A stretch of DNA of 64,000 nucleotides from Pristiophorus japonicus (GCF_044704955.1 NW_027251778.1:496001-560000), one strand, 5' to 3'; numbered from the stretch's first letter, positions 2,377 to 60,089 are shown. Numbers and translations are program-made. Notes: generated from the letters alone by a model not told the origin.

Positions 2377-2390
2377 CCACCACCTGGCGG
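2377..2390 (-). promoter_or_regulatory. CTCF-like motif CCGCCAGGTGGTGG downstream of V1 RSS
   Basis: Visual match to the CTCF core CCRSYAGRKGGCR with one mismatch; same orientation as the other sites. Confidence 0.5.
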
Positions 2391-2424
2391 CTGAGATTAT
2401 CGCACCCCTATCCTTCTGGTTCAG

Positions 2425-2805
2425 GCACTTGACTTATGAGGATAGGTTGAGTTGGTTGGGCCTCTACACATTACAGTTCAGCAGAATGAGAGATGAACTT
2501 ATTGAAACTTGTAGGATAATGAGGGCGCTTGACAAGGCCGATGCAGAGAGATATTTCACTCATAGGGGAGAGGAGAACTAGGGGAAATAGTCTTAGAATA
2601 AGGAGCCACTTATTTAAAACTGAGATGCGTAGGGATTTCTTCACTCAGAGGGTTGTAAATCTGTGGAATTTTCTGCCCCAGATAGGTGTGGAGGCTGGGT
2701 CGTTAAATATATTTAAGGCGGGGATAGACAGATGTTTGAGCGATAAGGGAGTTACGGTTATGGGGAGCGGGAAGGGAAGTTGATCTGAGTCCCTGATCAG
2801 ATCAA
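2425..2805 (+). mobile_element. CR1 LINE 3' fragment
   Basis: Encodes YEDRLSWLGLY..RMR..FFTQRVVNLWN, the typical CR1 ORF2 C-terminus. Confidence 0.85.
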
Positions 2806-3169
2806 ACAGAGCAAAGAGGAAGATACTGTATATCTTCCTATCTTTCTCTCTTTCTTCTCTACGCCCTACCCTATACTACACATTTTTAATCGGTAAAGAC
2901 CTCTGATAGGTTCACCCCCTCAGCTTTCTCGTTTATTGGCACAACAGCCCCAGCCTGTTCAGCCTTTCCCGACAGTGTGAACTTCTCAATTCTGGTGTTA
3001 TCCCTGTTAAACTTCCTTTGCACCTGCGAGAGTGCCTCTACACCTAATCTCACACTTTTATTCTAAACCTTTTTCCTCTTGTCAAAAACACATTCGCTCT
3101 GCAGAATAAACTCAACAGAACTCGGCACGGCATTGGTTCACCATCCACAGGTGTTTCCTGCCATGGCTT

Positions 3170-3208
3170 GGTTTGTGTCGAGCCCCTCCATCTCCCTGAG
3201 TCACTGTG
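3170..3208 (-). other. 23-RSS of V1
   Basis: CACAGTG-23 bp-ACACAAACC. Confidence 0.95.
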
Positions 3209-3945
3209 CAGACTCCAGGCGCAGTAATACACGGCAGACTGATCCACTTGAAGGCCGGAGGAATTCAGGTTAAACTCCTTGTCATTCGGTCGCTTGGCGG
3301 TAAAACCGTCCACCGTCCCCTCTGGATTCACAATATTGATGCCCATGGAGTAAAACATGAACTGCGGCTCCTTCCCCGGGTCCTGTCTGTACCAGTACAT
3401 GTTTGGGGTGCTTGCTCCCTCCACAGTGCATTTAAATTCCACACCCTCCGCGGGAAATCTGGAGACAGCGGCCGGAGTCTGGCGGATAGTCTGTGAGCTC
3501 ACATCTGGGAAAGAGACAGGGAGAGGAGTCAGTGAGTAAACAGGGTCATTCTGGGGAATGGGAGAAAGACAGAAAGAAAGAAAGAAGGAAAGAAATAAAG
3601 AAAGGTACAAAGAAAGAAAGAAAGTAAGGAAGTTAGTAAGAAAGATATAGAGAAACAACGACTGAGACAAAGAGAGAGGGAGAGAAAGAGAGAGAAAAAG
3701 AAAGAAAGATAGCAAGAAAGAAAGAAGTAAAGAATGAGAGAAGGAGAGAAAGAAAGAAGTGAAGAATGAGATAAAGAGATAAAGAAAGTAGTAAAGAAGT
3801 AAAGAATGAGAAAAGAAAGGAAGAGAGAAAGAAAGAAGGAACGAAAGAAGGAAAGAAACAGTAAGGAACGGATATTTACAACGATTATTGTGTGAAATAA
3901 TCACTTACATTGAAATACGATCATGAGAACCAGTAACCGATACAT
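3209..3945 (-). CDS. TRBV: V1: TCR beta V segment, family A (TRBV30-like), apparently functional
   Basis: Leader 3945-3909 (MYRLLVLMIVFQ, GTAAGT donor). V exon 3504-3209 after cccAG: SQTIRQTP..C..WYRQ..YYCAWS, no stops. Confidence 0.9.
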
Positions 3946-4429
3946 CTCCTACTTTAGGATTCACTTTTGAAAATTAAATCAGCGAAAATAAGAGCGTTGA
4001 GTCTTTGAGGATCCAACCCGCTCCTTTCAAATCATTGAGCAAAATGTGAAGATCAATTTGGAAGTGGAGCAGGAAGTGGGTGATGTAATTTCCCCAATTA
4101 CATCACCACGTTCAAGTTATTACGTAGGAAAGCACTAACCTATAAAATAAGAGTCAATCCATGCTATGTCAAACCATACTGAAATTCCGCTTGGGTCTGG
4201 GACCAAAATACTCGATCGATAAGAAATAGTTTACAAAAACAACAATAGCACGAGCATGCATCTATATTGCGCCTTCAACGTCCATGTGCGCTTCACGGGA
4301 GCGTTATCGAACGACCCCAGCAACAGCGTGAAGTGATAGCTTGGGGAAATTAACTCCTAGGTGTATCCATAGGGCAACTGGGAATAAGACATATTCATCG
4401 ATTAGTCAGGACGCACTTGTAATACTGTC

Positions 4430-5280
4430 GGAGAGACAGAGGGAGAGTGAGGAGTGAGAGTCAGAGGAGGAGCGAGAGAGAGGGAAAGAGAGAGGAGGAG
4501 AGAGAGGAGGAGAGCGAGTGTGAGGATGAGCGAGAGGATGGGTGAGAGGGAGAGAGAGAGTGGAGAGAGCGAGAGGATGAGAGAGAGGGGGAGAGCGAGT
4601 GAGAGTATTAGAGAGAAATATTGGGAGATAGAGTTAGAGTGAGAGGATGAGAGAGGGAAAGAGAGAATAGGAGGGAGAGTGAGAGGATGAGAGAAGAGGA
4701 TGGGAGAGAAAGAGGGTGAGAGAGGGATGGAGAGGAGGCGAGAGCGTGAAAGGATGAACGAGAGAGGATGAGAGAGAGAGCGAGAGAGAGAGAGGAGACC
4801 GAATGAGAGGATAAGAGAGCGAGAGACGGAGAGAGGAGGATTGAGAGAGTATGGGAGAGAAAAGATGAGACAGAGACAGCGAGATAGAGCGAGGAGGAGT
4901 GAGAGTGAGAGGATGAGAGAGAGAGAGAGGTAGGGAGAGGAGGAGAGAGTGACAGCGAGGGTTAGAGGATGGGAGACAAAGAGGGAGACAGAGGTGAGAT
5001 GATGAGAGTGAGAGAATGAGAGAGAGAGGGGACAGAGAGCAGAGGAGAGAGCGTGAAAGGATGAGAGAGAGAGGGAGAAGATGGAAGAGAGAGGGGGAGA
5101 GAGAATACAAGAGAAAGAGAGAGAATGAAAGAGAGTTGCAGGGACAGATCTGAAGGGAGGATGACACAGAAAGGAAGGGAGCGAAAATGACAGCGACAGG
5201 TAGAGAATGAGACAGAGAGATAGAGAGAGAGGAACAGAGAGAGAGAGAGATAAATAGAGAGACATAGAGAGAGAGAGAGA
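4430..5280. repeat. GA-rich polypurine low-complexity tract
   Basis: About 850 bp of almost only G/A; paralogous to 17360-18290. Confidence 0.9.
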
Positions 5281-5454
5281 TTTGGTCTCCTGTAATAAGG
5301 AAGGATAGATATACTTGCCTTGGAGACGGTGCCAAGGAGGTTCACCAGACTGATTCCTGGGATGGTAGGGCTGCCTTATGATGAAAGATTGTGTAGACTG
5401 GGCCGATACTCTCTGGTGTTTAGAAGAATGAGAGGTGATATTCGTGAAATGAGC

Positions 5455-6045
5455 TTCTGAATGGGCCTCCTCTTGTTCCTTTCTAACAGGCTCGAAGGAC
5501 TGAATGTGCATCGTCCTGTTCCGATGTAACAGGCTCGAGGGGCTGACTGGGCCTGCTCCTGTTCCCATGTAATAGGCATGAGGTGCTGAATGGGTAACTT
5601 CCTGTTCCTGTGCAAGAGGCGCGAGGGGCTGAATGGGCCTCCTCCTGTTCCTGTGTTACAGGCTCGAGGGGCTGAATGGGCCTCCTCCTGTTCCTGTGTA
5701 ACAGACTCGAGGGGCTGAATGGGCCTCCTCCTGTTCCTGTGTAACAGGCTCGAGGGGCTGAATGGGCCTCCTGTTCCTGTGTAACAGGCTCGAGGGACTG
5801 AATGGGCCTCCTCCTGTTCCTGTGTAACAGGCTCGAGGGGCTGAATGGGCCTCCTCCTGTTCCTGTGTAACAGGCTCGAGGGGCTGAATGGGCCTCCTCC
5901 TGTTCCTGTCTAAAAGGCTCGAGGGGCTGAATGGGCCTCCTCCTGGTCCTGTGTAACAGGCTCGAGGGGCTGAATGGGCCTCCTCCTGTTCCTGTGTAGA
6001 AGTCTCGAGGGGCTGAATGGGCCTCCTCCTGGTCCTGTCTTCCTA
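5455..6045. repeat. 40/43-bp minisatellite array
   Basis: Tandem GGGCCTCC(TCC)TGTTCCTGTGTAACAGGCTCGAGGGGCTGAAT. Confidence 0.95.
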
Positions 6046-6088
6046 TTGTGAACTATGTTCTGGTCACTGGTGTGTGTCGTGGTCTACA

Positions 6089-6102
6089 GCACCCTCTACT
6101 GT
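6089..6102 (-). promoter_or_regulatory. CTCF-like motif ACAGTAGAGGGTGC
   Basis: Type-I flank site, separated from V2 by a LINE insertion. Confidence 0.45.
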
Positions 6103-6558
6103 CCCTGTGGACAAAGAAAACACACTGTCAGTGTTTAAAAAGTATTTTACTTGCATTCCAACTTTTTAAAATTCGTTTTTTTTAAACTATCGTTCTGTCT
6201 TTCTATCTTTCTTTATTTTCTCTATCTTTCTTTCCGACTCTTTGTCCAGCTTACATTCTTTCATTTTTACCTTCTGTCTTTCTTTCTCTCTTCATTTCTT
6301 GCTTTTATTCTTTCTATCTTTCTTTCTTCCTATCTTCGTTTCTTTCGTTCTTTCTATCTTTCTATCTGGCTTCTCCTCGCCCTACCCAACAAAACACATT
6401 GTTAATCTGCAAAGACCTCTGACAGGTTCACCCATCAGCCTTCTCTTTTCTGGACATAACAGCCACAGCCTGTTCAGCCTGCCATGATAGTTTGAACCTC
6501 TCAAATCTGATGTTATCCGTGTTAATCTTTCTTTGCTACTTCTCCCGAGCCTCTACAT

Positions 6559-9412
6559 ATGAATATAAGAGCATACGAATTTGGAAAAGGAATAGGCCAT
6601 CAAGTCCCTCGACCCTGCTCCGCAATACAAGATCATGGCTGATCTGGCCGTGGACTCAGCTCCACTGACCCGCCCGCTCCCCGTAACCCTTAATTCCCTT
6701 ATTGGTTAAAAATCTATCTATCTGTGACTTGAATACATTCAATGAGCTAGCCTCAACTGCTTCCTTGGACAGAGAATTCCACAGATTCACAACCCTGTGG
6801 GAGAAAAAATTCCTTCTCAACTCGGTTTTAAATTGGCTCCCCCGTATTTTGAGGCTGTGCCCCCTAGTTCCAGTCTCCCCGACCAGTGGAAACAACCTAT
6901 CTGCCTCTATGTTGTCTATCCCTTTCATTATTTTTAATGTTTCTATAAGATCACCCCTCATCCTTCTGAACGCCAATGAGTTAAGATGCAGTCTACTCAA
7001 TCTATCATCATATAGTAAGCCCCTCATCTCCGGAATCAGCCTAGTGAATCATCTTTGTACCCCCTCCAAAGCTAGTATATCATTCCTGAAGTAAGGTGAC
7101 CAAAACTGCACGCAGTACTCCAGGTGTGGCCTCACCAACACCCTGTACAGTTGCAGCAGGGCCTCCCTGCTTTTTACTCCATCCCTCTCGAAATGAAGGC
7201 CAACATTCCATTCGCCTTCCTGATCACCTGCTGCACCTGCAAACTAATTTTTGGGATTAATGCACAAGGACCCCCAGGTCCCTCTGCAACGCAGCATGTT
7301 GTAATTTCTCCCCATTCAAATAATATTCCCTTTTACTGCTTTTTTTCCCCCAGGTGAATAACATTGTATTCCATCTGCCAAACCTTAGCCCATTCGCTTA
7401 ACCTATCCAAATATCTTTGCAGCCTTTCTGTGTCCTCTACACAACCCGCTTTCCCACTAATCTTTGTGTCATCTGCAAATTTTGTTACACTACACTCTGT
7501 CCCCTCTTCCAGGTCATCTATGTATATTGTAAACAGTTGTGGGCCCAGCACCGATCCCTGTGGCACACCACTAACCACCGATTTCCAACCCGAAAAGGAC
7601 TCATTTATCCCGAATCTCTGCTTTCTTTTCGCCAGCCAATTCTCTATCCATGCTAATACATTTCCTCTGACTCCGCGTACCTTTATCTTCTGCAGTAACT
7701 TTTGTGTGGCAGCTTATCGAATGCCTTTTGGAAATCTAAATACACCACATCCATCGGTACACCTCTATCTACCATGCTCGTTATATCCTCAAAGAATTCC
7801 AGTAAATTAGTTAAACATGATTTCCCCTTCATGAATCCATGCTGCGTCTGCTTGATTGCACTATTACTATCTAGATGTCCCGCTATTTTTTCCTTAATGA
7901 TAGTTTCAAGCATTTTCCCACTACAGATGTTAAACTAACTGGCCTATAGTTACCTGCCTTTTGTCTGCCCCCTTTTTTAAACAGAGGCGTTACATTAGCT
8001 GTTTTCCAATCCGCTGGTACCTCCCCAGAGTCCAGAGAATTTTGGTAGATTATAACGAATGCATCTGCTAAAACTTCCGCCATCTCTTTTAATACCCTGG
8101 GATGCATTTCATCAGGATCAGGGGACTTGTCGACCTTGAGTCCCATTAGCCTGTCCAGCACTACCCCCCTAGTGATAGTGAATGTCTCAAGGTCCTCCCT
8201 TCCCACATTCCTGTGACCAGCAATTTTTGGCATGGTTTTTGTTTCTTCCACTGTGAAGACCGAAGCAAACTAATTGTTCAAGGTCTCTGCCATTTCAACA
8301 TTTCCCATTATTAAATCCCCCTTCTCATCTTCGAAGGGACCAACATTTACTTTAGTCACTCTTTTCAGGTTTGTATATCTGTAAAGGCTTTTACTATCTG
8401 TTTTTATGTTTTGCGCAAGTTTTCCTTCGTAATCTATCTTTCCTTTCTTTATTGCTTTCTTAGTCATTCTTTGCTGTTGATTAAAATTTTCCCAATCTTC
8501 TAGTTTCCCACTAACCTTGGCCACCTTATACGCATTGGTCTTTAATTTGATACTCTCCTTTATTTCCTTGGTTATCCTCGGCTGGTTATCCCTTCTCTTA
8601 CCGCCCTTCTTTCTCACTGGAATATATTTTTGTAGAGCACTATGAAAGAGCTCCTTAAAAGTCCTCCATTGTTCCTCAATTGTGCCACCGTTTAGTCTGT
8701 GTTCCCAGTCTACTTTAGCCAACTCTGCCCTCAACCCACTGTAGTCCCCTTTGTTTAAGCATAGTACGCTCGTTTGAGACATTACTTACTCACCCTCAAT
8801 CTGTATTACAAATTAACCATACTGTGATCACTCATTCCGAGAGGATCTTTTACTAGCAGATCGCTTATTATTCCTGTCTCATTACACAGGACCAGATCTA
8901 AGATAGCTTGCTCCCTTGTAGGTTCTGTAACATACTGTTCTAAGAAACAATCCCGTATGCATTCTATGAATTCCTCCTCCAGGCTACCCCGTGCGATTTG
9001 ATTTGACCAATATGTAGGTTAAAATCCCCCATGACTACTGCCGTTCCTTTTTCACATGCCTCCTTTATTCCCTTGATTATTGCCCGCCCCACCGTGAAGT
9101 TATTATTTGGGTCCTATAAACTACACCCACCAGGGAATTTTTCCCCTTACTATCACTAATCTCCACCCACAATGATTCAACATTTTGTTCATTAGAGCCA
9201 ATATCGTCTCTCACAACTGCCCTGATATCATCCTTTATTAACAGAGCTACCCCACCTCTTTTCCCTTTTTGTCTGTCTTTCCGAATCGTCAGATACCCCT
9301 GTATGTTTAATTCCCAGTCTTGGCCACCCTGCAACCACGTTTCTGTAATGGCCACCAAATCATACCCATTTGTAATGATTTGTGCCGTCAACTCATTTAC
9401 TTTATTTAGAAT
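6559..9412 (-). mobile_element. CR1-clade LINE, about 2.85 kb, endonuclease to 3' UTR, frameshifted
   Basis: APE motif DLVAITETWL (9077-9391), then NYRPVSLTS, YLDFQKAFD, GVPQGSVLGP, FADD, RLHLNSL..RRMRGDL. Interrupts the conserved V 3' flank. Confidence 0.93.
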
Positions 9413-9535
9413 GTGAGAGATTACATCTAATCTCTCACTTTTATTCTAACCCGTCTCTGCTTGTCAAAAACACATGAGCTCTGCAGCATAAACGTGACAG
9501 TGTTCACCATCCACAGGTGCTTCCTGCCATGGTGG

Positions 9536-9574
9536 GGTTTGTGTCGAGCCCCTCCATCTCCCTGATTCACTGTG
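9536..9574 (-). other. 23-RSS of V2
   Basis: CACAGTG-23-ACACAAACC. Confidence 0.95.
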
Positions 9575-10068
9575 CAGACTCCAGGCGCAGTAATAGACGG
9601 CCGCCTGATCCGCCCGCAGGCCGGAGGACTTCAGGTTAAACTCCTTGTCATTCGTTCGCTCGGCGGTAAAACCGTCCACCATCCCCTCTGGAGACACGGC
9701 ATTGGTACCCACGGAGTAAACCATGAACTGCGGCTCCTTCCCCGGTTCCTGTCTGTACCAGTACATGTAAGTGTCGCTTGTTCCCTCCACAGTGCATTTC
9801 AATTCCACTCCCTCCCAGGAAAATCTGGAGACAGCGGCCGGAGTCTGGCGGATAGTCTGTGAGCTCACGTCTGGGAAAGATACGGGGAGAGGAGTCAGTT
9901 AGTGAACAGGGATAATCTGGGGATTGGGAGAAACACAGAAAGATAGATAGAAGGAAAGAATGAAAGAAAGAAAGAAAGAAAGATAGAAAAAAGATTACCA
10001 ACAAGACTTATATTGTGTAAAAGTCCCTTACACTGAAACAAGAACATCAGACCAAGTAACTGATACAT
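9575..10068 (-). CDS. TRBV: V2: TRBV family A, apparently functional
   Basis: Leader 10068-10032 (MYQLLGLMFLFQ, GTAAGG donor); open V exon 9870-9575 ending YYCAWS. Confidence 0.9.
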
Positions 10069-10177
10069 CTTTGACTTGAAGTTTCAGCTCAATAATGAAA
10101 GGAGCGAGAGCAGGAGCGGGGAGTCTGTGAGGAGCCAACTTCGCTCTTTTCAAATCAGTGAGGAAAATGTGAAGAAT

Positions 10178-10350
10178 GTGAGGAAGTGATGCAGGTTTGG
10201 ATCGTCGAGTCCCTCCCACTGATTGACAGACAAAGCCCCTCCCTCTCTGATTGACAGACACAGCCCCTCCCTCTCTGATTGAGAGACAAAGCCGCTCCCT
10301 CCCTCATTGTTAGCCCCGCCCCTCTCTCTCTGATTGGCCTTTGATTGGAG
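10178..10350. promoter_or_regulatory. Family-A promoter: GGAAGTGATGCA (Ets + CRE-half) plus TGATTGACAG/CCAAT repeats
   Basis: Exact TGATTGACAG at 10220 and 10248, ATTGG boxes near 10333 and 10344; similar arrangement upstream of other A leaders. Confidence 0.55.
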
Positions 10351-10429
10351 CAGCTATGAAGTGGGAGTTACCTACGGAGGAGCAAAGGAATTTCGAAGAC
10401 CATGTCCACAAATCACTACCAATGAGCGG

Positions 10430-10985
10430 ATAGTTGCGGGTGAAGGGGGCTGGAATTGGAGAGAAAGATTTGATTCTTCAGTTGCACACAGCCTCAGTCA
10501 GAATTCATCTGGAGAACTGACTTCAGTTCTGCGCACTGCACCTCTCTGTTAACCTTGCAAGGGCTTCAACACAGTTTCAACAGGATGGCAGCAGTGCCGG
10601 TGGGTCAAATGAAACGGACAGATTGAATCAACGTAATTTGTATTATATTGACAAAGGAGATTCGGCGGTGAACTGATTGGCGTTCGTAAAGCATTAAAAG
10701 GGGTTGATATGGTCGACAGAGAGAATCAATTTCTTTCAGTCGGGGACTCCAGAAGGAAGGGACAGAAACTTAAAATTAGAGCCAGGTCATTCTGGCATTG
10801 CAACAGAAATCACTTCTTCATATAAAGAGTACTGGGTATATGGACCTCTCTGCTCCAAAAGCTGTTGAGACTGGGGGTCAATTGCAGGCTTCAAGACAGA
10901 GATTGAATAAATTTTGGTTGGGTATGGGTATTGCATGATATGTGGTAGAGGAGACCAATATTTATCGGCAATTATATAACTGCAT
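10430..10985 (+). mobile_element. Old CR1 3' fragment co-duplicated with family-A cassettes
   Basis: Degenerate CR1 ORF2 C-terminus. Paralogs at about 20340-20890, 30490-31035, 33920-34465, 36870-37410, 44320-44860, 50630-51130, 53520-54070 and 58735-59260. Confidence 0.8.
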
Positions 10986-11250
10986 GAGCAAGCAGGCTCG
11001 AGAAGCTGAATGGGCTTCCTCCTGTTCCTGTGTAACAGGCTCGAGAAGCTGAATGGGCCTCCTGTTCCTGTGTAACAGGCTCGAGGGACTGAATGGGCCT
11101 CCATTTGTTCTTGTGTAACAGGCTCGAGGGGCTGAATGGACCTCTTCCTCTTCCTGTGTAAAAGGCTCGTGGGGATGAATGGGTCTGCTCCTGTTCCTGT
11201 GTAAAACGCTCGAGGGGCTGAATGGACCTCCTCCTGTTCCTGTGTTCCTG
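10985..11250. repeat. 40/43-bp minisatellite array
   Basis: Same unit, about 6 copies. Confidence 0.9.
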
Positions 11251-11288
11251 TTGTGAACCAAGTGCGCTGGTGTGCTTCGTCGTCTAGA

Positions 11289-11302
11289 GCGCCCTCTACT
11301 GT
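11289..11302 (-). promoter_or_regulatory. CTCF-like motif ACAGTAGAGGGCGC
   Basis: Close match to the CTCF core, about 560 bp beyond the V3 nonamer. Confidence 0.6.
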
Positions 11303-51129: not shown

Positions 51130-51805
51130 AATGGGGCTGCAGGCTCGAGGGGCTGAATAGGCCTCCTCCAGTTACAGTGTAATAGGCTCGAGGGGCTGAA
51201 TGCGTCCCCTGTTCCTGTGTAACAGGCTCGAGGGGCTGGATGGGCCACCTCCAGTTCCTGTGTAACAGGCTTGAGGGACAGAATGGGCCACCTCCTGTTC
51301 CTGTGTAACAGGCTCGAAGGGCTGATTGGGTCGCCTCATGTTCCGATGTAAGAGATTAGAGTGGCAGAATGGGCCTCTTCTTGTTGCTGTGTAACAGACA
51401 CCAGGGCTGAATTGACCTCCACCTGTTGCTGTGTAACAGGTTTGAAGGGCTGAATGAGCTTCCGTATCTTTCTGTGTAAAATGCTCGAGGGGCTGAATGG
51501 GCCTCCTCCTGTTCCTGTGAAACAGGCCGGGGAGCTGAATGGCCTCCTCCTGTTGCTGTGTAACATGCCTGAAGGGCTGAATGGCATCCTCTCGCTGCTG
51601 TGTAACAGGCTCGGGTTGTTGAATAATCCAACTCCTGTTGCTTTGTTACAGGCTCGAGGGGCTGAATGGGCCTCCAGTTGCAGTGTAACAGGCTCGAGGT
51701 GCAGAATGGGCCTCCTCCTGTTCCTTTGTAACAGGCCCGAGATCTGAATGGGCCTCCACGTTACAGTGTAACAGGTTCGAGTCTGAATGGGCCTCCTCCT
51801 GTTCC
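51130..51805. repeat. 40/43-bp minisatellite array
   Basis: About 16 diverged units. Confidence 0.93.
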
Positions 51806-51858
51806 CATGTTGATATTGTGAACCATGTTCTGGGCACTCGTGTGTTTCATGGTCTAGA

Positions 51859-51872
51859 GCGCCGTCTACTGT
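51859..51872 (-). promoter_or_regulatory. CTCF-like motif ACAGTAGACGGCGC
   Basis: Type-I flank site. Confidence 0.45.
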
Positions 51873-52401
51873 ACCTGAGGAGTTAGAAAACACACTGTCA
51901 GTGTTTAAAAACGTATGGTACTTGCATTCCAACTTTCTAATAATTCGTTATTTTCTTAAAACTATCGTTCTGCTTTTCTATCTTTCTTTATTTTCTCTAT
52001 CTTCCTTTCCTACACTTTTACCTACTTACATTCTTTCGTTCTTTCCTTCTGTCTTTCTTTCTTCCTATCTTGCTTTCTTACTATCTTCCTCTCCTTCTAT
52101 CTTGCTTCTCTACGCCCTACCCTATAAAACAGATTGTTAATCTGTAAAGACCTCTGACAGGTTCACCCCTCAGCCTTCTATTTTCTGGACACAACAGCCC
52201 CGGCCTATCCAGCCTTTTCTGATAGTTTGGACCTCTCAATTCTGGTGTAAACCTGTTAATCTTTCTTTGCCCCTTCTGCAGTGCATCTACACCTAATCTT
52301 TCACTTTTATTCAAAACCGCATCTGCTTGTCAAAAACACATTCGCTCTGCAGAATAAACACGACGGGGTTGACCATCCACAGGTGTTTCCTGCCATGGTG
52401 G

Positions 52402-52440
52402 GGTTTGTGTCGAGCCCCTCCATCTCCCTGAGTCACTGTG
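52402..52440 (-). other. 23-RSS of V18
   Basis: CACAGTG-23-ACACAAACC. Confidence 0.95.
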
Positions 52441-53015
52441 CAGATTCCAGGCACAGTAATACACGGCCGCCTGATCCGCCCGCAGGCCGGAGGACTTCAG
52501 GTTAAACTCAATGCCATTTTGAGGCTGGGCGGTAAAATCGTCCACCGGCCCCTCTGGATCCACAGCATTGGTACCCACGGAGTAAAACATGGACTGCGGC
52601 CCCTTCCCCGGGTCCTGTCTGTACCAATACATGCAAGGGTTGCTTGCTCCCTCCACAGTGCATTTCAATTCCACTCCCTCCCCGGGAAATCTGGAGACAG
52701 CGGCCGGAGTCTGGCGGATAGTCTGTGAGCTCACGTCTGGTATAGAGACGGGGAGAGGAGGCGGTCAGTAAACAGGGACATTCTGGCAATGTAGGAAAAA
52801 AATAAAGAAGGAAAGAAAGAATTAAAGAAAGAAAGAATTAAAGAATTAAAGAAAGAAAGAAAGAAAGAAAGAAAGAACGAACGAACGAAAGAAAGAAAGA
52901 ACGAAAGAAAGAAAGAAAAAAGGAAAGAAAGAAAGAATATGTCACTATCAAGACTTATATTTTGTAAAAGTGCCTCACGTTGAAACAAGATCATCAGACC
53001 CAATAACTGATACAT
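52441..53015 (-). CDS. TRBV: V18: TRBV family A, apparently functional
   Basis: Leader 53015-52979 MYQLLGLMILFQ with GTGAGG donor; V exon 52736-52441 ending YYCAWNL. Confidence 0.9.
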
Positions 53016-54069
53016 CTTTGACTTGAAGATTTCCCTCAATAATGAAAGGAGCTTGAGCAGGAGTGGGGAGTTTGTGAGGATCCAAATTCGCACTTTTCAA
53101 TCATTGAGCAAAATATGAAGAATTTGAGGAGGTGATGCAGGTTTGGACCGTCCATCCTCTCTCTCTGATTAAGAGACAAAGCCCCTCCTTCTCTGACTGA
53201 CAGTCAAAGCCCCTCACTCTCGGATTAATAGTCAAAGTCCCTCCCTCTGAATGAGAGACAAAGACCCTCCCCCTGATTGACAGACGAAGTGCCTCCCTCT
53301 CTGATTGATAGACAAAGCCCCTCCCTCTCTGATTGACATACACAGCCCCTCCCTCTCTGATTAACATACAAAGCCCCTCCCTCCCTGATTGTCAGCCCGC
53401 CCCTCACTCTCTGATTGGCCATGATTGGAGCATATGGGAAGTGGTCATGAACTGTTGAGGTGCAAAGGGTTTTCGAAGACCATGTCCACAAATCACTACC
53501 AATGAATGGATAGTTACGGGTAAATGGGGCTGGGATACAGAGAGAAAGATTTGATGCTTCAGCTGCATAGACCCGCAGTCAGAATTCAACTGGAGAACTG
53601 TCTTCAGTTCTGGGCACTGCACCTCCCTGTTAGACTTGCATGGGCTTCAACACAGATTCAACAGAATGACAGCACGGCCGGGGAGTTAAATGAGGAGGAT
53701 AGGTTGCATCAACGTGGCTTTTATTTCGTTGACTGTAGGAGATTCGGCGGTGAGTTTATTGAGGTTGGTGAAGCATTAACAGGGGTTGATATGATAGATC
53801 GAGAGAATCAATTTCCGCCAGTCGGGGACTCCAAAGCGAAGAGCCAGAGACTTCAAATTAGTGCCAGCCGGTTCAGGCATTGCATGAGAAATCACTTCTT
53901 CACACAAATAGTAGTGGAAATATGGAACTCTCTTCTTCAATAGCTGCTGAGGCTGGGGGGGGGGGAAAGGCATGCTTCAAGACAGCGACTGGTACAGTTT
54001 TGTTTGGGTAGGTGTGTTCCGTTATATGGGGCACAGGAGATAAATAATTATCGACCATGATATAACTGA

Positions 54070-54290
54070 ATGGGGCAGCAGGCTCAAGGGGCTGAATGGG
54101 CCTCCTCCTGTTCCTGTGTAACAGGCTCGAGGGGCTGAATGGGTCTCCTCCTGTTCCTGTGTAACAGGCTCGAGGGGCTGAATGGGCCTCCTCCTGTTCC
54201 TGTGTAACAGGCTCGAGGGGCTGAATGGGCCTCCTCCTGTTCCTGTGTAACAGGCTCGAGGGGCCGAATGGGCCTCCTGTTCCTGTGTTC
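54070..54290. repeat. 43-bp minisatellite array
   Basis: About 5 units. Confidence 0.9.
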
Positions 54291-54868
54291 GTATTGTGAA
54301 CCATGTTCTGGGCCCTGGTGTGTTTCATCGTCTAGAGTGCCCTCAACTGTCCCTGTCAGTGGTATAAAATGTATTTTACTTGCATTCCAACTTTTTAAAA
54401 ATTCGTTCTTTTTTTACTATCGTTCTGCCTTTGTATCTTTCTTTATTTTCTCGATATTTCTCTCCTACTCTTTTCCATGCTTACATTCTTTCAATCATTC
54501 TTTCTCGCTTCCTATTTTCCTTTTATGCTTCCTAGCTTCATATTTTTCTATCTTCCTATCTTTCTATCTTGCTTCTCTATGCCCTACCCTATAAAACACA
54601 TTGTTAATCTGTAAAACCTCTGAGAGGTACCAACCTCAGCGTTCTCTTTTCTGGACACAACAGCCCGAGTCTGTTCAGCCTTTCCTGAAAGTTTGAACCT
54701 CCCATTTATGGTGTTATCCCTGTTAATCTCTCTTTGCACATTCTCCAGTGCCTCGACACCTAATCTCTCACTTTCACTCTAACCCGTCTCTGCTTGTCAA
54801 AAACACATTCACGCTGCAGAATCAACGCAAGAGGGTTCACCAGCCACAGGTGTTTCTTGCCATGGTGG

Positions 54869-54907
54869 GGTTTGTGTCGAGCCCCTCTATCTCCCTGAGT
54901 CACTGTG
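54869..54907 (-). other. 23-RSS of V19
   Basis: CACAGTG-23-ACACAAACC. Confidence 0.95.
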
Positions 54908-55526
54908 CAGATTCCAGGCGCAGTAATACACGGCCGCCTGGTCCGCCCGCAGGCCGGAGGTCTCCAGGTAGAAGTGGGTGTTGTCGGGTCTCTTGGCGGT
55001 GAATCCGTCCACCACACCGGAGGGATCGACCATTTTGGCGAAACTGGAAAAGAACATATTCTCGGGTTCCCGGTCAGGATGCCACCGGTACCAGTTGAAT
55101 TCGGAGCCAGCTGTTGCTTCTGTGTAAAGGCACTCGATGCTAACCAGAGTGCCCGGGGAATTGGATATGGAAGCGGGGGTCTGTTGGATCAGCACGGCCC
55201 CCACATCTGTAAAACCGAGAAAGAGAGAGAGTTAGAGATAGAGATAAACCCAGGGAGAAATAGCATATAAACACCCTCCATGAAGGGTCGGAGGAGGGGA
55301 GAGAGAGTGAGGGAGAGGGGGCGAGAGAGGCAGAGAGACAGAGCGCGACGGAGAGAGCGAGAAAGCGAGGGAAAGATAGAGAAAGAATGAGATACAGAGA
55401 GAGAGAGTTAAACAGACCGACAATCTATACATCACCGGAGGATGAGAAGGAGCACATGTGCAGTCAGAGATAGAAACGAGAAAGTGAGAGAGACAGAGAG
55501 AGAGAGTGAGACAGAGAGAGAGAGAC

Positions 55527-55563
<37 letters not shown>

Positions 55564-55916
55564 TAGACACACACAAAAAGAGAGAGATTGAGAGACAAGG
55601 GAAATATAAATGGACAGGCAGGAAATAAGGCAGACAGACCGATATAGAGCGCGGGAGAGTGACAGGGAGCGTGGAAGAAAGATAGATGGAGACAGAGAGA
55701 CAGAGAGCGGGAGGGAGACAGACAGACAGAGGACACACTATAAACCGAGGGGGAGAGAATCTAGACCAGCCCGCGGTGTGAAGGGACACACGGGGAAATT
55801 AAAGTGAGGATCGCTGAGATCTCACAGCCCAGCTCCACCTTACCCGTTAACACCAGCAACACAAGCCAGAGCTGGGAAACACGCATCTCTGGGAGGAGGG
55901 AAATCCGGGGGTTCAT
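54908..55916 (-). CDS. TRBV: V19: TRBV family B, apparently functional
   Basis: Leader 55916-55844; open V exon 55206-54908 ending YYCAWNL. Confidence 0.88.
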
Positions 55917-57034
55917 GGTGTGCAACCTCTGAATATCTCACAGTTCTGGGCACTGTGGCATTTACTGACCCCTGCTCTCCAATGTTAAATGTGCGGGTGG
56001 GAGGGGCCAAACTCTCTTCACCAGTTCATTGGCTCCCTCATCGGGACTGGCCATTCCCGGGGCGGGGCTAATATTAACTCTGGAGAATCGGCGCCCAGTC
56101 TCCTCCCTTTGATGGTGGAGTCTGGGTTTCCTTAAACCCACAACAACACGGAGGTTTTACTCTGTATCCAACCTGTAAATTATATGCGTTAATCTGTATC
56201 TGATCATTAAAGGGGAACTCTTTCTTTCACTCACTCTTTCTTTCGTGCTTGCTTTCATTCTCTCCTTCTATCCTTTCTTTCCTTCTGTCTTTCATCCTCT
56301 CTTGCCATCGTTCTTTATTTCTTCCTTTTATTCATTCTCTCCTACCTTTATCCTTCCTTCTTTCTCTTACTCTAAATTATCTTTACTCCTCTCTTTCCAT
56401 TTTTCTTTCTCTCTTTCTTTCTTTACTTATTTCCTGCTCTCATTCTTTCTTTATATATTTCCTTTCTTTCTTTCCTTCTTTCTTTCATTCTATCTTTTAT
56501 TCTCTTTCGTTCTTTAGTTCTTTCCTTATTTCCTTATTTCTTTCATCTGAACTGTCTGTCTTTCTGTCCTTCTTTTTTTCTATCTTTCAGTCTGTGTTTC
56601 GTTCCATCTATCATATTTTCATTAATGTATTTCTCTTATTCTTTATGTAAATCCTGTTTCCTTTCATCGAATCAAAATCTCGATATTTCATTCTTTATGA
56701 CTTTCTTGCTTTCTCTTTCATTATTTATCTGTCTTTCCCTCTCCAAGTTGTTGAAGTTATTTCTGCCTTTCTTTTTTGCTTACATTCCTTCGCTCCTTTT
56801 TTTATTATTTCTCTCACTTTATTTTCCTTTTTCTCTTTCTTACATTATTTGCTTCTTTTTTGATCGTTTTTATTCTAATCCCTCCCGTGGCATTCCTATT
56901 CGCTTACTTTTCTTTTTACCTCAACTTTGATCTTTCTTTCATGCAACGAAACCTTCTTTATTAGAGCCATGGTTGATTCTTTCATTACTTGTGAACCACT
57001 CGAGAGGATCAAATGTGCTGAAATGTGATCCCTG

Positions 57035-57048
57035 CTGTCCCCTACTGA
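57035..57048 (-). promoter_or_regulatory. CTCF-like motif TCAGTAGGGGACAG (type-II flank)
   Basis: Weaker core-like match. Confidence 0.4.
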
Positions 57049-57631
57049 CCATTGTCTTATATGGTCATCCTCTCCAGGAGCGTGTGCAACTGCTGATAGA
57101 GTGCACAGACAATCTGAGGGAGAGACAGTCAGACAGACAGNNNNNNNNNNNNNNNNNNNNNNNNNNNNNNNNNNNNNNNNNNNNNNNNNNNNNNNNNNNN
57201 NNNNNNNNNNNNNNNNNNNNNNNNNNNNNNNNNNNNNNNNNNNNNNNNNNNNNNNNNNNNNNNNNNNNNNNNNNNNNNNNNNNNNNNNNNNNNNNNNNNN
57301 NNNNNNNNNNNNNNNNNNNNNNNNNNNNNNNNNNNNNNNNNNNNNNNNNNNNNNNNNNNNNNNNNNNNNNNNNNNNNNNNNCAGTGAGAAAGATGAATAG
57401 ATAGATGTAAAAAGAGATGGTTATATACATATAAATATAAACATAGATAGATAATGAATGAATGGATGGACGGACGAATGAACGGATGGATGAACAGATG
57501 GACAGACGCATATAAAGAGAGAGAGAGAGAAAGAGACAGATTGATAGACAACTGGGTAAATAGACTTACAAACAAACTCAGATATACTATGAGAAACATT
57601 TATCTCGCACAGGTGTTTCCTGCCATGGTGG

Positions 57632-57670
57632 GGTTTGTGTCGAGCCTCTCCATCTCCCTGAGTCACTGTG
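57632..57670 (-). other. 23-RSS of V20
   Basis: CACAGTG-23-ACACAAACC. Confidence 0.95.
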
Positions 57671-58361
57671 CAGACTCCAGGCGCAGTAATACATGGCAGC
57701 CTGATCCGGCCGCAGAACGGAGGACTTCAGGTTAAAATCCTTGTCATTCGGTCGCTCGGCGGTAAAACCATCCACCGGCAACTCTGGAATCACACTTTGT
57801 ACTATTTGCGAGAGAAACATAAACATTGGCTCCTTCCCCGGGTCCTGTCTGTACCAGTACATGTTTGGGTTGCTTGCTCTCTCCACAGTGCATTTCAATT
57901 CCACTCCCTCCCCGGGAAATCTGGAGACAGCGGTCGGAGTCTGGTGGATAGTCTGTGAGCTCACATCTGGGAAAGAGACAGGGAGAGGAGGCGGTCAGTA
58001 AACAGGGACATTCTGCCANNNNNNNNNNNNNNNNNNNNNNNNNNNNNNNNNNNNNNNNNNNNNNNNNNNNNNNNNNNNNNNNNNNNNNNNNNNNNNNNNN
58101 NNNNNNNNNNNNNNNNNNNNNNNNNNNNNNNNNNNNNNNNNNNNNNNNNNNNNNNNNNNNNNNNNNNNNNNNNNNNNNNNNNNNNNNNNNNNNNNNNNNN
58201 NNNNNNNNNNNNNNNNNNNNNNNNNNNNNNNNNNNNNNNNNNNNNNNNNNNNNNNNNNNNNNNNNNNNNNNNNNNNNNNGAATACGGTTATTAACAAAAC
58301 TTATATTTTGTAAAAGTCTCTTACGCTGGTACAAGACCATCAGGCCCAGTAACTGATACAT
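57671..58361 (-). CDS. TRBV: V20: TRBV family A, apparently functional
   Basis: Leader 58361-58325 MYQLLGLMVLYQ; V exon 57966-57671 SQTIHQTP..YYCAWS. Confidence 0.88.
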
Positions 58362-59269
58362 CTTTGAATCGAAGTTCTCCCTCAATAAAGAAAGGAGCGA
58401 GAGCAGGAGCGGCGAGTCTGTATTGAGCCAAATTCGCTCTTTTCTAATCATTGAGGAAAATATGAAGAACGTGAGGAAGTGATGCAGGTCAAAACCGTCT
58501 GTCCCCTCCCTCTGGTTGGTGGACAAAGCCCCTCTCTCTCTCGCTTTGACAGACAAAGACCCTCCCTCTCTGATTGACAGATAAATCCCCTTACTTTGAT
58601 TGACAGAAAAAGCCGCTCCCTCCCTCTCTGATTGGCCATGATTGAATCAGATGGGATGTGGGAGTTAACTGTGGAGGAACAAAGTGATTTCGAAGACCAT
58701 GTCCACAAATCACTACCAATGAGCGGATAGTTACAGGTGAAGGCGGCTGGAATACAGAGAGAAAGGTTTGATGCTTCAGTTGAACAGTCCCTCAGTCAGA
58801 ATCCATCTGGAGAACTGCCTTCAGTTCTGGCACTGCACCTCCGGGTTAGACTTGCATGGGCTTCAACACAGATTCAGCAGAATGGCAGCTAGGCCGGGGG
58901 GTTAAATAAAGAGGAGAGGTTGAGTGGCGTGTTTTACATTGACTATAGGAGATTTGGCGGAAAGCTGATTGAGGTTCGTAAAGCATTAAAAGGGGTTGAT
59001 GTGGTAGATAGAGATAATCAATTTTCTCCAGTCGGGGACACCAGAAGGAAGGGACAAAGACTTAAAATTGGAGCCAGGCCGTTGAGGGATTTCATCAGAA
59101 ACCACTTCTTCACACAAAGGGTAGTGTGAATACGGAACTCCCTTCTCCAAAAGCTGTTGAGGCTGGGGGTCAATTGCAGACTTCAAGACAGAGATTTGGT
59201 TGGGTATGGGTGTCACGTGATATGGGGCAAAGGAGGCAAATAATTATTGACCATGACCAACTGTTTGGG

Positions 59270-59525
59270 GCAGCAGATTCGAGGGGTTGAGTGGTTTTGC
59301 TCCTGTTCCTGTGTAACAGGCCCGAGGGGCTGAATGGGCCCCTCCTGTTCCTGTGTAACAGGCTCGAGGGGCTGAATGGGCCTCCTCCTGTTCCTGTGTA
59401 ACAGACTCGAGGTGCAGAAAGGGCCCCTCCTGTTCCTGTGTAACAGGCCCGTGGGGCTGAATGGGCCACTCGTGTTCCTGTGTAACAGGCTTGAGGTGCT
59501 GAATGGGGCTCCTCCTGTTCCTGTG
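59270..59525. repeat. 43-bp minisatellite array
   Basis: About 6 units. Confidence 0.9.
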
Positions 59526-60089
59526 TTCCGATTGTGAACCACATTCTGGACACTGATGTGCTTCATGCTCTCGAGCGCCCGCTATTCTCCGTGTAGCGAT
59601 AGAACACATACGGTCAGTGTTTAAAAGATTATTTTACGTGCTTTCCAACTTTCTAAAAATTCGTTTTTTTTACTATCGTTCGGCCTTTCTATCTTCATTT
59701 TCTCTTTCTTTTTTTCCTACTCTTTTACCTGCTTACATTCTTTCATTCTTTCCTTCCGTCTTTCTTTCTATCTCCCTTTCTTTCTATCTCACTTCTCTAC
59801 GCCCTACCCTGTAAAACACATAGTTAATCTGTAAAGACCTCTGACAGGTTCACCCCTCAGCCTTCTCTTTTCTAGACACAACAGCCCCGGCCTGTTCAAC
59901 TTTTCCGCAAAGTTTGAACCTCTCAATTCTGGTGTTATCCCTGTTAATCATTCTTTGCCCCTTCTCCAGTGCCTCTACATCTAATTTCACAATTTAACTC
60001 CAACCCGTCTCTGCTTGTCAAAACCACATTCGCTCTGCAGAATAAACGCGACAGGGCTCACCATCCACAGGTGTTTCCTGCCATGGTGG

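What the first reader, a model, noticed from the sequence alone, without database searches (positions are those of the whole stretch)
2377..59588. Co-oriented CTCF-like sites beyond most V RSSs, in three unrelated flank types
Seen: type-I flanks carry ACAGYAGAKGGCG-like cores about 500-600 bp past the nonamer (11289, 23268, 31173, 37760, 42878, 45696, 51859; weaker at 35094, 54337, 59575; the 6089 copy was displaced by a LINE). The non-homologous type-II flanks carry a different core, TCASNAGKGGRCAR (26492, 29014, 48742, 57035). V1 has a third, CCGCCAGGTGGTGG (2377). All are on the minus strand, pointing the same way as the RSSs. Established: oriented CTCF elements near V segments modulate cohesin loop extrusion and RAG scanning in mouse Igh and TCR loci. 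Inference: a roughly one-site-per-V architecture operates in this probable chondrichthyan locus, which would make the mechanism ancient in jawed vertebrates. Repeats within one flank type are explained by duplication, so the informative part is the agreement across three flank types.
Basis: partly seen in the sequence, partly recalled or inferred. Interest (0 to 1): 0.8.

Follow-up and report, generated by a model that had tools for sequence, protein, structure and literature searches.

The report
CTCF-like sites behind shark V genes
In a shark T-cell-receptor V-gene array, most V genes are followed by a DNA motif that looks like a binding site for the chromatin-looping protein CTCF, always pointing the same way as in mouse, but only motif statistics support this, not binding data.

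Summary
The window is a dense array of 21 full-length V exons plus one fragment, all on the minus strand, with 23-bp-spacer RSSs (TCR-beta-like).

- **Motif counts.** A CTCF matrix (recalled from memory as JASPAR MA0139.1) gives 11 minus-strand and 0 plus-strand hits at >=14 bits. Shuffles predict 0.35-0.87 per strand.
- **Placement.** Each hit lies behind a V RSS, 338-815 bases past the heptamer, except one displaced 3.5 kb by a LINE-like insertion.
- **Coverage.** 11 of 21 V genes have a site >=14 bits and 14 of 21 have one >=10 bits. Three type-I copies have decayed or been deleted, and four V genes have none.
- **Independence.** Most copies are duplicates. Collapsed to three motif-bearing contexts with no detectable homology, the same-strand recurrence is still unlikely by chance (about 1e-4 to 1e-3).
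- **Constraint.** Within families the motif is not significantly better conserved than its surroundings.

Best reading (0.45): V-linked CTCF elements facing the recombination centre, as in mouse Tcrb and Igh. Main rival (0.33): chance motifs amplified by cassette duplication. The scan has noted similar motifs elsewhere in this genome.

The parts
2375..2393 (-). CTCF-like site behind V1 (VA family), in its own unique context. 16.0 bits, p 1.7e-6, 815 bases past the heptamer. A second register at 2372-2390 scores 12.1 bits.
   Evidence: It lies 37 bp past the truncation point of a TE fragment (2835-2430) and outside TE homology.
6087..6105 (-). Type-I site belonging to V2, 14.3 bits. A 2.9-kb LINE-like insertion (6557-9423) displaces it to 3469 bases from the heptamer.
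   Evidence: APE endonuclease remnant at 9077-9391.
11287..11305 (-). Type-I site behind V3 (VB), 15.8 bits, 595 bases past the heptamer.
23266..23284 (-). Type-I site behind V7 (VB), weakened to 10.8 bits.
26490..26508 (-). Type-II site behind V8 (VB), 14.9 bits, 487 bases past the heptamer. It is the only type-II copy with no gap between RSS and motif.
29012..29030 (-). Type-II site behind V9 (VA), 16.2 bits. A 180-N gap lies between RSS and site. The V9 heptamer is damaged (CTCAGTG).
31171..31189 (-). Type-I site behind V10 (VB), 14.0 bits.
35092..35110 (-). Type-I site behind V11 (VA), decayed to 9.4 bits.
37758..37776 (-). Type-I site behind V12 (VB), the strongest at 19.5 bits, p 1.5e-7.
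42876..42894 (-). Type-I site behind V14 (VA), 17.9 bits.
45694..45712 (-). Type-I site behind V15 (VB), 19.2 bits.
48740..48758 (-). Type-II site behind V17 (VA), 18.0 bits. A 526-N gap lies between RSS and site.
51857..51875 (-). Type-I site behind V18 (VA), weakened to 10.1 bits.
54335..54353 (-). Type-I site behind V19 (VB), weakened to 11.2 bits.
57033..57051 (-). Type-II site behind V20 (VA), 15.7 bits. A 241-N gap lies between RSS and site.
59573..59591 (-). Type-I site behind V21 (VB), dead at about 0 bits after several substitutions.
62470..62700 (-). Type-I flank of V22 (VB). A 32-column deletion in the alignment removes most of the motif (14 of its 19 columns) and the bases after it.
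   Evidence: alignment; no hit >=6 bits in this flank
3170..63411 (-). V array: 21 full-length V exons plus 1 fragment in three V-set families (VA, VB, VC), each followed by a 23-bp-spacer RSS.
20898..23214 (-). Longest of ten 43-bp minisatellite arrays, which start about 47-52 bp after each type-I site. The unit is the amplified 5' end of a dispersed TE.

Best explanation
These are V-segment-associated CTCF-binding elements. One oriented site sits in the spacer behind most V cassettes of a shark TCR-beta-like array. Its G-rich core reads in the same direction as V transcription and the RSS, so it faces the D-J recombination centre.

Inferred mechanism, by analogy with mouse Tcrb and Igh: bound CTCF stops cohesin coming from the recombination-centre side. 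Each V is then held transiently next to the D-J centre, which spreads V usage along the array.

Shown here: motif quality, strand-specific excess, fixed placement behind the RSS, and recurrence in three contexts with no detectable homology.

Inferred: CTCF occupancy, the position of the D-J-C end, and any effect on recombination.

Individual sites appear dispensable, since copies decay at close to the neutral rate. Any selection would act on the array as a whole rather than on each copy.
For: 1. Motif quality. Eleven sites score >=14 bits (p <= 5.8e-6) and four score >=17.9 bits.
2. Strand excess. 11 minus against 0 plus at >=14 bits, with 0.35-0.87 expected per strand. The IUPAC check by the DNA search agrees.
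3. Placement. The 19-mer starts 487-633 bases past the heptamer in all 11 undisplaced, gap-free cases, and 815 bases past it in V1. Distance to the next V exon varies more widely, about 1.4 to 3.6 kb by my subtraction from the coordinates.
4. Independence. Sequences around the type-I, type-II and V1 motifs show no similarity beyond shuffles. The six Smith-Waterman comparisons were matched by 224, 346, 36, 297, 478 and 1 of 500 shuffles.
5. Collapsed statistics. After collapsing duplicates to 12,915 non-redundant bases, three same-strand hits have P 6e-5 to 1.5e-4 for a given strand.
6. Not TE-borne, as far as the window shows. The type-I motif lies about 45 bp upstream of the TE 5' end defined by three other copies. 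The V1 motif lies 37 bp beyond the point where five other TE copies continue differently.
7. Weak trend towards retention.
   - High-information positions in type I differ from consensus in 8 of 123 cells, against 153 of 1204 in neighbouring columns (nominal p 0.043).
   - 6 of 11 undeleted type-I copies keep >=14 bits, against 29% expected under independent drift at 12.7%.
   - All 4 type-II copies keep >=14.9 bits.
8. Precedent. In mouse Tcrb, 18 CTCF elements are interspersed among V-beta segments and all are convergent to those at the recombination centre (PMC10772921, section 6 passage). All V-region sites of Igh and TCR-beta share one orientation (PMC5859386, abstract). In the little skate, CTCF motifs show the orientation code at domain boundaries, scored with MA0139.1 at threshold 8 (PMC10115646, passages).
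Against: 1. No binding evidence. The only runs holding this DNA are 4 DNA runs of one study.
2. No significant footprint when changes are counted as events on a tree. Type-I high-information columns show 0.73 changes per column against 0.99-1.08 (p 0.22). Type II shows 0.27 against 0.43 (p 0.27). The whole type-I 19-mer ranks 133rd of 190 windows for conservation.
3. Copies decay behind apparently intact V genes: V21 about 0 bits, V22 deleted, V11 9.4 bits.
4. V4, V5, V6 and V13 have no site >=9 bits within their spacers.
5. No site matches the IUPAC core perfectly; the best have 1 mismatch.
6. CpG retention at the motif is no better than at other consensus CpGs (9 of 10 against 73 of 94 overall).
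7. The matrix was recalled from memory.
8. The flank 'types' were defined after seeing the data, so the collapsed P values are approximate.
9. The D-J-C end and any convergent partner sites lie outside the window.
Confidence: 0.45

Rival explanations
1. Hitch-hiking. A few chance CTCF-like sequences in ancestral V cassettes were multiplied by tandem and block duplication. They drift neutrally and have no role in recombination, whether or not some of them bind CTCF.
For: - Copy number comes from duplication. Eleven type-I copies and a twelfth flank (V22) with the motif deleted form a few clades, and the four type-II copies are one family.
- There is no significant excess conservation of the motif.
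- About half of the type-I copies fall below 14 bits, and one is deleted.
- V genes with dead sites look intact.
- Taken alone, the V1 site (16 bits) would be expected about 0.2 times per window on the two strands.
Against: - Three contexts with no detectable homology all carry a strong hit on the same strand at a similar distance from an RSS. P is about 1e-4 to 1e-3 after collapsing duplicates.
- The type-II consensus scores 20.2 bits and the best type-I copies 19.2-19.5 bits (p about 1.5e-7 to 1.9e-7). That corresponds to about 0.01 expected per strand per window.
- The plus strand shows no excess.
Confidence: 0.33
2. Repeat-borne motif. The motif-bearing segments belong to transposable elements or to minisatellite-associated sequence. 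Their association with V genes would then reflect where such elements inserted, as with SINE-borne CTCF sites in mammals.
For: - Every type-I site lies 47-52 bp before a 43-bp minisatellite that is the amplified 5' end of a dispersed TE.
- The V1 site is 37 bp from a TE fragment.
- Other notes of this scan mention tandem arrays of CTCF-like motifs elsewhere in this genome. These are unchecked.
Against: - Three other TE copies with intact 5' ends have unrelated sequence upstream.
- Five TE copies continue past the V1 truncation point with sequence unlike V1's.
- The type-II motif lies in a 160-bp unique island between two microsatellites, with no TE homology found.
- No Rfam family or tRNA-like head was found.
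- The window alone cannot exclude a low-copy repeat.
Confidence: 0.1
3. The sites are functional but belong to another factor or role. Examples are a different zinc-finger protein, a spacer insulator or enhancer-blocker between neighbouring V promoters, or a germline recombination hotspot that drives cassette duplication.
For: - The best-conserved block in type II lies immediately 3' of the core rather than in it (columns 607-640 of the alignment).
- A 21-nt patch of that block recurs behind the V1 site at a different spacing (1 of 500 shuffles).
- All type-I and type-II cores have a non-C at the first core position.
Against: The shared feature of the three contexts is the CTCF core itself and nothing else. 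The matches reach p about 1.5e-7 with a matrix built for CTCF. No alternative factor can be named from the data.
Confidence: 0.1

Closest known systems
Mouse Tcrb V-beta-interspersed CTCF-binding elements (18 bound sites, all convergent to the 5'PC, CBE1 and CBE3 sites at the D-beta-J-beta recombination centre)
   Same: The locus type is the same (TCR-beta-like V genes with 23-RSSs). Sites are interspersed among V segments, all have one orientation, and that orientation is the direction of V transcription, towards D-J (PMC10772921 section 6 passage; PMC5859386 abstract, Table 2 and discussion passages).
   Different: [quoted passage not shown] Here the sites lie about 0.5-0.8 kb downstream of the RSS, with about 14 sites for 21 V genes in 64 kb. 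Mouse sites are shown to bind CTCF and, for Trbv1, to matter for recombination. Here nothing is shown beyond sequence.
Mouse Igh proximal VH CTCF-binding elements (7183, Q52 and other families)
   Same: A CTCF element is linked to the RSS side of the V segment, roughly one per V within a duplicated family, and all are oriented towards the D-J end (PMC5859386 Table 2 and abstract).
   Different: The Igh sites lie within 100 bp of the RSS. These lie 487-815 bases away and are separated from the RSS by unique sequence and microsatellites. RAG scanning is established for Igh, but Tcrb was reported to use looping plus diffusion rather than scanning alone (PMC10772921 abstract).
CTCF orientation code in the little skate genome
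   Same: It is a cartilaginous fish in which the vertebrate CTCF matrix (MA0139.1, threshold 8) marks accessible sites with an orientation bias at domain boundaries. This makes it reasonable to use that matrix for a shark (PMC10115646, passages).
   Different: That work concerns genome-wide domain boundaries in fin tissue, not antigen-receptor loci. No antigen-receptor analysis appeared in the passages I read.
CTCF-like motifs 24-25 bp behind RSSs of other TCR V segments in this same genome
   Same: Same genome, motif on the V gene's own strand behind the RSS, and motif evidence only.
   Different: Those notes report a different spacing (24-25 bp), other V families and other pieces of the genome. 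I could not inspect those sequences.

Membership tests
V-segment-associated CTCF-binding elements of antigen-receptor loci | Sequence matches the CTCF core motif at a stringent threshold | tested here: met
   Eleven sites score >=14 bits (p <= 5.8e-6) and four score >=17.9 bits. Four matches to the IUPAC core have <=1 mismatch, against 0.52 expected. Both the matrix and the IUPAC string were recalled from memory.
V-segment-associated CTCF-binding elements of antigen-receptor loci | More sites than chance, not explained by duplication alone | tested here: met
   0 plus against 11 minus hits, with 0.35-0.87 expected per strand. After collapsing to 12.9 kb of non-redundant sequence, three independent same-strand hits have P about 6e-5 to 1.5e-4. 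With the block-shuffle rate this is about 9e-4. Flank types were defined after seeing the data.
V-segment-associated CTCF-binding elements of antigen-receptor loci | Uniform orientation of V-region sites, facing the D-J recombination centre | tested here: inconclusive
   All sites are on the V and RSS strand. This faces D-J for any V that joins by deletion or inversion, which is an inference. The D-J-C end is not in the window.
V-segment-associated CTCF-binding elements of antigen-receptor loci | Convergent partner sites flanking the D-J cluster | not testable with these tools
   Outside the 64-kb window.
V-segment-associated CTCF-binding elements of antigen-receptor loci | Occupancy by CTCF and cohesin in developing lymphocytes | not testable with these tools
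   The look-up of sequencing runs returned 4 DNA runs of one study and no ChIP, ATAC or Hi-C run.
V-segment-associated CTCF-binding elements of antigen-receptor loci | Sequence constraint on the motif relative to its flank | tested here: inconclusive
   Type-I high-information columns show 0.73 changes per column against 0.99-1.08 (p 0.22). Cell counts are 8 of 123 against 153 of 1204 (nominal p 0.043). Type II shows 0.27 against 0.43 (p 0.27).
V-segment-associated CTCF-binding elements of antigen-receptor loci | Effect on looping or V usage when the site is lost | not testable with these tools
   Needs repertoire data or genetics. Natural losses (V21, V22) and gains offer a comparison.
Transposon-borne CTCF sites | Motif lies inside the element's consensus and travels with its copies | tested here: not met
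   Other copies of the adjacent TE lack the motif-bearing sequence. This rests on the window only, not on genome-wide repeat annotation.
TCR-beta V gene segments (identity of the array) | V-set domain, 23-bp-spacer RSS, many tandem V genes, beta-like framework | tested here: inconclusive
   - V-set domain for all three families, E 8.6e-12 to 8.2e-15.
- 19 clean 23-RSSs.
- The VA family's best single-domain PDB hits include TCR V-beta chains, E about 1e-20.
- The VB family hits mainly antibody scFv chains.
- The 'CAWSL' exon end as beta-typical is recalled, not tested.
- No C, D or J segment lies in the window.

The most novel reading that the evidence does not exclude
A 'one oriented CTCF element per V cassette, facing the recombination centre' layout already existed in the common ancestor of sharks and mammals. 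It is maintained by turnover rather than by conservation of individual sites. In this reading, three cassette types with no detectable homology each acquired or kept such a site about 0.5-0.8 kb behind the RSS because arrays without them recombine poorly. Cohesin loop extrusion would then have been coupled to V(D)J recombination from near its origin.
Probability: 0.25. Interest if true: 0.7.

Novelty: new member of a known kind. Interest (0 to 1): 0.45.

Why it matters
Co-oriented CTCF elements among V segments are central to how mouse Igh and Tcrb loci fold for long-range V(D)J recombination. Whether this layout is a mammalian refinement or an original feature of RAG-based immunity is not settled.

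My three full-text searches that named sharks or cartilaginous fish found nothing on CTCF in their antigen-receptor loci:
- CTCF + shark + recombination signal: 7 papers, none on the topic by title or abstract start.
- CTCF + ChIP-seq + catshark: 8 papers on development and genomes.
- 'CTCF binding' + 'cartilaginous fish' + 'antigen receptor loci': 0 papers.

A very dense shark V array carries strong, uniformly oriented motifs behind two thirds of its V genes. It also holds natural 'knock-outs' in close paralogues (V21, V22). This makes the question directly testable with thymus ChIP or CUT&RUN, Hi-C and repertoire sequencing.

If binding fails, the locus becomes a cautionary example of how tandem duplication can fake a regulatory pattern.

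Tried and rejected
1. TE origin of the type-I and V1 motifs. I mapped the TE boundaries using other copies in the window. The motifs fall outside the TE, so this was rejected at window level.

2. Deep homology between the type-I, type-II and V1 motif contexts. Smith-Waterman alignment of the +/-60-140 bp flanks against 500 shuffles each gave nothing, apart from one 21-nt patch between type II and V1 at a different spacing. The motifs are treated as non-homologous.

3. Paralogue footprinting in type I and type II, by cell counts, Fitch events on a FastTree tree, and sliding windows. No significant constraint appeared, only a trend.

4. CpG retention as a proxy for protection from methylation. 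It was uninformative.

5. Neutral-drift simulation of motif survival. Observed 6 of 11 against 29% expected. This is suggestive only, because the copies share ancestry.

6. Experimental data through public runs. Only 4 DNA runs of one study were found, with no ChIP, ATAC or Hi-C. Read laying was not used, because contigs of whole-genome DNA runs cannot show binding.

7. Cross-species flank comparison. The word search found a single relative, P0001 of Chiloscyllium punctatum at 69% identity.

8. Rfam and tRNA scans for a SINE head or a structured RNA. None was found.

9. Link to the next V's promoter instead of the previous V's RSS. This was rejected because the distance to the upstream RSS is nearly fixed, while the distance to the next V exon varies from about 1.4 to 3.6 kb with minisatellite length.

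10. Supplementary files of the papers were not opened. Table S5 of PMC5859386 and the skate paper's supplementary figures might refine the comparison.

Full report
**What the window is.**
The 64-kb window holds 3,584 N in 14 gaps. A scan for heptamer / 23±1 spacer / nonamer finds 19 clean RSSs, all on the minus strand, plus one chance-like plus-strand hit with an 11-bp spacer. tblastn with three V exons translated from the window finds 22 V-like loci, all on the minus strand. They are 21 full-length exons and one 58-residue fragment (V16).

They fall into three families: VA, VB, and VC (V13 and the weaker V5). All three are V-set domains, with Pfam E values of 8.6e-12 to 8.2e-15. V5 has an RSS-like signal. 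V9 has a damaged heptamer, CTCAGTG.

The best single-domain PDB matches of VA include TCR V-beta chains. VB matches mostly antibody scFv chains. I therefore call the array 'TCR-beta-like': tandem V genes, 23-RSSs, and exon ends reading CAWSL, which I recall as beta-typical. Earlier notes of this scan call the genome a shark. The one database relative found is a Chiloscyllium punctatum protein at 69% identity.

**The observation.**
I scored both strands with a 19-column CTCF matrix that I recalled from memory as JASPAR MA0139.1. Its consensus came out as the familiar TGGCCACCAGGGGGCGCTA.

| Threshold (bits) | Plus hits | Minus hits |
|---|---|---|
| >=14 | 0 | 11 |
| >=12 | 1 | 12 |
| >=10 | 3 | 17 |
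| >=8 | 9 | 24 |

At >=12 bits, two of the minus hits are overlapping registers of the V1 site.

Expected hits per strand at >=14 bits:
- 0.35 from the exact i.i.d. distribution.
- 0.46-0.47 from 200 dinucleotide shuffles.
- 0.45 plus and 0.87 minus when shuffling within 250-bp blocks to keep local composition.

The plus strand is therefore at chance and the minus strand far above it.

The DNA search with the recalled IUPAC core gives an independent check:
- <=1 mismatch: 4 matches, all minus, against 0.52 expected.
- <=2 mismatches: 27 matches (21 minus, 6 plus) against 10.08 expected.

No site matches the IUPAC core perfectly.

**Per-V picture.**
- Sites >=14 bits follow V1, V2, V3, V8, V9, V10, V12, V14, V15, V17 and V20. 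That is 11 of 21 full-length V genes.
- Sites of 10-14 bits follow V7, V18 and V19, bringing the total to 14 of 21.
- V11 has decayed to 9.4 bits and V21 to about 0 bits.
- V22 has a 32-column deletion that removes most of the motif.
- V4, V5, V6 and V13 have nothing >=9 bits on the minus strand.

The site starts 487-633 bases past the heptamer in the 11 undisplaced, gap-free cases, and 815 bases past it in V1. It is 3,469 bases away in V2, where a 2.9-kb insertion (6557-9423) splits the flank. That insertion carries a decayed APE-type endonuclease ORF (PF03372, E 8.5e-6).

For V9, V17 and V20 an assembly gap lies between RSS and motif, so their distances (338, 696, 619) are only estimates. 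The sequence on both sides is colinear with the gap-free paralogue V8. This fits gaps inside the (CTGT)n microsatellite. I did not fill or look up any gap.

**Anatomy of the flanks.**
- **Type I** (V2, V3, V7, V10, V11, V12, V14, V15, V18, V19, V21, V22). In order: RSS, about 330 bp of unique sequence, about 250 bp of GAAA-rich sequence, about 100 bp of unique sequence holding the motif, then after 47-52 bp a 43-bp minisatellite of 4.7 to 55.8 copies. The minisatellite is the amplified 5' end of a dispersed TE whose body follows.
- **Type II** (V8, V9, V17, V20). In order: RSS, about 450 bp of (CTGT)n, a 160-bp unique island holding the motif, then a long GAAA-rich stretch.
- **V1.** Its first ~380 bp are type I at 81% identity. 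Next comes a TE fragment (2835-2430), then unique sequence with the motif 37 bp beyond the TE truncation. V6 shares V1's TE but has no motif.

Flank type does not follow V family: both VA and VB genes carry both types.

**Is the motif transposon-borne?**
Three other copies of the type-I TE with intact 5' ends have unrelated upstream sequence. Five copies of the V1 TE continue beyond V1's truncation point with sequence unlike V1's. Rfam and ARAGORN find nothing. Within the window the motifs lie outside recognisable TEs. A genome-wide repeat annotation is still needed.

**Are the three contexts independent?**
I ran Smith-Waterman comparisons of the sequences on either side of the three motifs, each against 500 shuffles. 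Five of six gave ordinary scores, matched or beaten by 224, 346, 36, 297 and 478 of 500 shuffles. The sixth was a 21-nt patch, matched by 1 of 500, shared by type II (15 bases after the motif) and V1 (74 bases after it). Because the spacing differs, the motifs themselves are not positional homologues.

I collapsed the window by self-BLAST to 12,915 non-redundant bases. Three independent >=14-bit hits on one given strand then have P of 6e-5 to 1.5e-4. My own Poisson calculation with the higher minus-strand rate gives about 9e-4. The flank 'types' were defined after seeing the data, so these are orders of magnitude, not exact probabilities.

**Is the motif under constraint within families?**
The evidence is not convincing.
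- In the 12-sequence type-I alignment the 19-mer differs from consensus in 28 of 213 cells (13.1%). Neighbouring columns differ in 153 of 1,204 cells (12.7%). The motif window ranks 133rd of 190 for conservation.
- Substitutions do avoid the 11 high-information positions: 8 of 123 cells, nominal p 0.043 against neighbours. They pile up in the 8 low-information positions: 20 of 90 cells.
- Counted as Fitch events on a tree of the flanks, the high-information columns show 0.73 changes per column against 0.99-1.08 (p 0.22).
- Type II shows 0.27 against 0.43 (p 0.27). Its best-conserved block lies just 3' of the core.
- Under independent drift at 12.7% per site, 29% of copies should keep >=14 bits. 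Observed: 6 of 11 undeleted type-I copies. The copies share ancestry, so this is only a trend.
- CpG retention at the motif (9 of 10) matches other consensus CpGs (73 of 94 overall).
- V genes whose site is dead or deleted (V21, V22) have open V exons and perfect RSSs.

**Outside evidence.**
They are probably the source sample.

Earlier notes of this scan report CTCF-like motifs 24-25 bp behind RSSs of other TCR V genes, and motifs accompanying 'TRBV30-like' cassettes, on other pieces of this genome. They also report tandem arrays of CTCF-like motifs. I could not check any of them. They show that the scan has seen this theme before, and they are not independent support.

**Literature.**
- PMC10772921 (passages read with 'find': abstract, introduction, section 6 and others). 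It states that mouse Tcrb has 18 CTCF elements interspersed among V-beta segments, all convergent to three at the D-beta-J-beta region. It also reports that the Trbv1 element anchors loop extrusion and supports Trbv1 recombination, and that Tcrb does not rely on RAG scanning alone.
- PMC5859386 (abstract, Table 2 and discussion passages). All CTCF sites in the V parts of Igh and TCR-beta have one orientation, towards D-J. Igh sites of proximal families lie within 100 bp of the RSS. [quoted passage not shown]
- PMC10115646 (passages). It shows a CTCF orientation code in the little skate using MA0139.1 at threshold 8.
- PMC7932699 (one passage). It reports CTCF-motif enrichment in stable open-chromatin peaks, in a study comparing mouse limb buds and bamboo-shark fin buds.
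- Three searches for CTCF in shark or cartilaginous-fish antigen-receptor loci found nothing on the topic.

**Verdict.**

The best reading is that these are V-linked CTCF elements facing the recombination centre (confidence 0.45). This would be a shark counterpart of the mouse Tcrb and Igh arrangement, with its own spacing of about 0.5-0.8 kb behind the RSS and a much higher density.

The main rival is neutral hitch-hiking of a few chance motifs on duplicating cassettes (0.33). It is favoured by the absence of a footprint and by dead copies behind intact V genes. It is disfavoured by the recurrence in three contexts with no detectable homology. A repeat-borne origin and a different binding factor each get about 0.1.

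Novelty: a new member of a known kind. Interest is moderate, because the result is expected by analogy, rests on motif evidence only, and has been noted elsewhere in this genome. The locus does offer natural site losses that make a clean experimental test possible.

Noticed in passing
window 5457-6038, 10993-11245, 20898-23214, 34467-35045, 37419-37706, 44867-45642, 51140-51805, 54079-54278, 59279-59526, 62180-62548: A 43-bp minisatellite of 4.7 to 55.8 copies follows every type-I flank's motif position. Its unit is the amplified 5' end of a dispersed transposable element. The unit scores only about 6-8 bits with the CTCF matrix, in the same orientation as the main site.
   Followed up: partly
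window 6557-9423: A 2.9-kb insertion splits V2's type-I flank. It carries a decayed APE-type endonuclease ORF (9077-9391, minus strand, PF03372, E 8.5e-6) and an opposite-strand copy of the dispersed TE (6640-7012).
   Followed up: partly
window 29330-29368: The V9 RSS heptamer reads CTCAGTG, so the essential CAC is broken. The nonamer and the V exon look intact, and a strong type-II site (16.2 bits) follows.
   Followed up: no
window 46790-46963: A 58-residue fragment of a VB-type V exon (V16) lies 160 bp upstream of V15. It is likely a remnant of an unequal crossover.
   Followed up: no
window, whole array: Flank type does not follow V family, since VA and VB genes each carry type-I and type-II flanks. 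The tree of type-I flanks groups V10+V19, V11+V14, V12+V15+V7 and V21+V22+V3. This pattern suggests block duplication and exchange between cassettes.
   Followed up: partly
window 2299-2319 (V1 flank) and the block 15-36 bases after each type-II site (e.g. 48704-48725): A 21-nt patch is shared by the V1 flank and the best-conserved block of type-II flanks, at different distances from the CTCF-like core (74 against 15 bases). Only 1 of 500 shuffles reaches its alignment score.
   Followed up: no
window 50222-50625: A 26-27-bp tandem repeat of about 15 copies lies in the spacer before V17. On the minus strand its units give weak CTCF-matrix hits (6.2 and 8.7 bits at 50467 and 50493).
   Followed up: no
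window 13738-14028 and 40436-40726 (downstream flanks): The V4 (VA) and V13 (VC) flanks share about 1.1-1.2 kb with each other. This is a further flank type that has no CTCF-like site.
   Followed up: no
window 37170-37198, 59025-59053 and similar: The strongest plus-strand matrix hits, other than 41606, lie in the body of the TE that follows type-I flanks. They repeat with the TE at 6-11.5 bits and account for much of the plus-strand background.
   Followed up: partly
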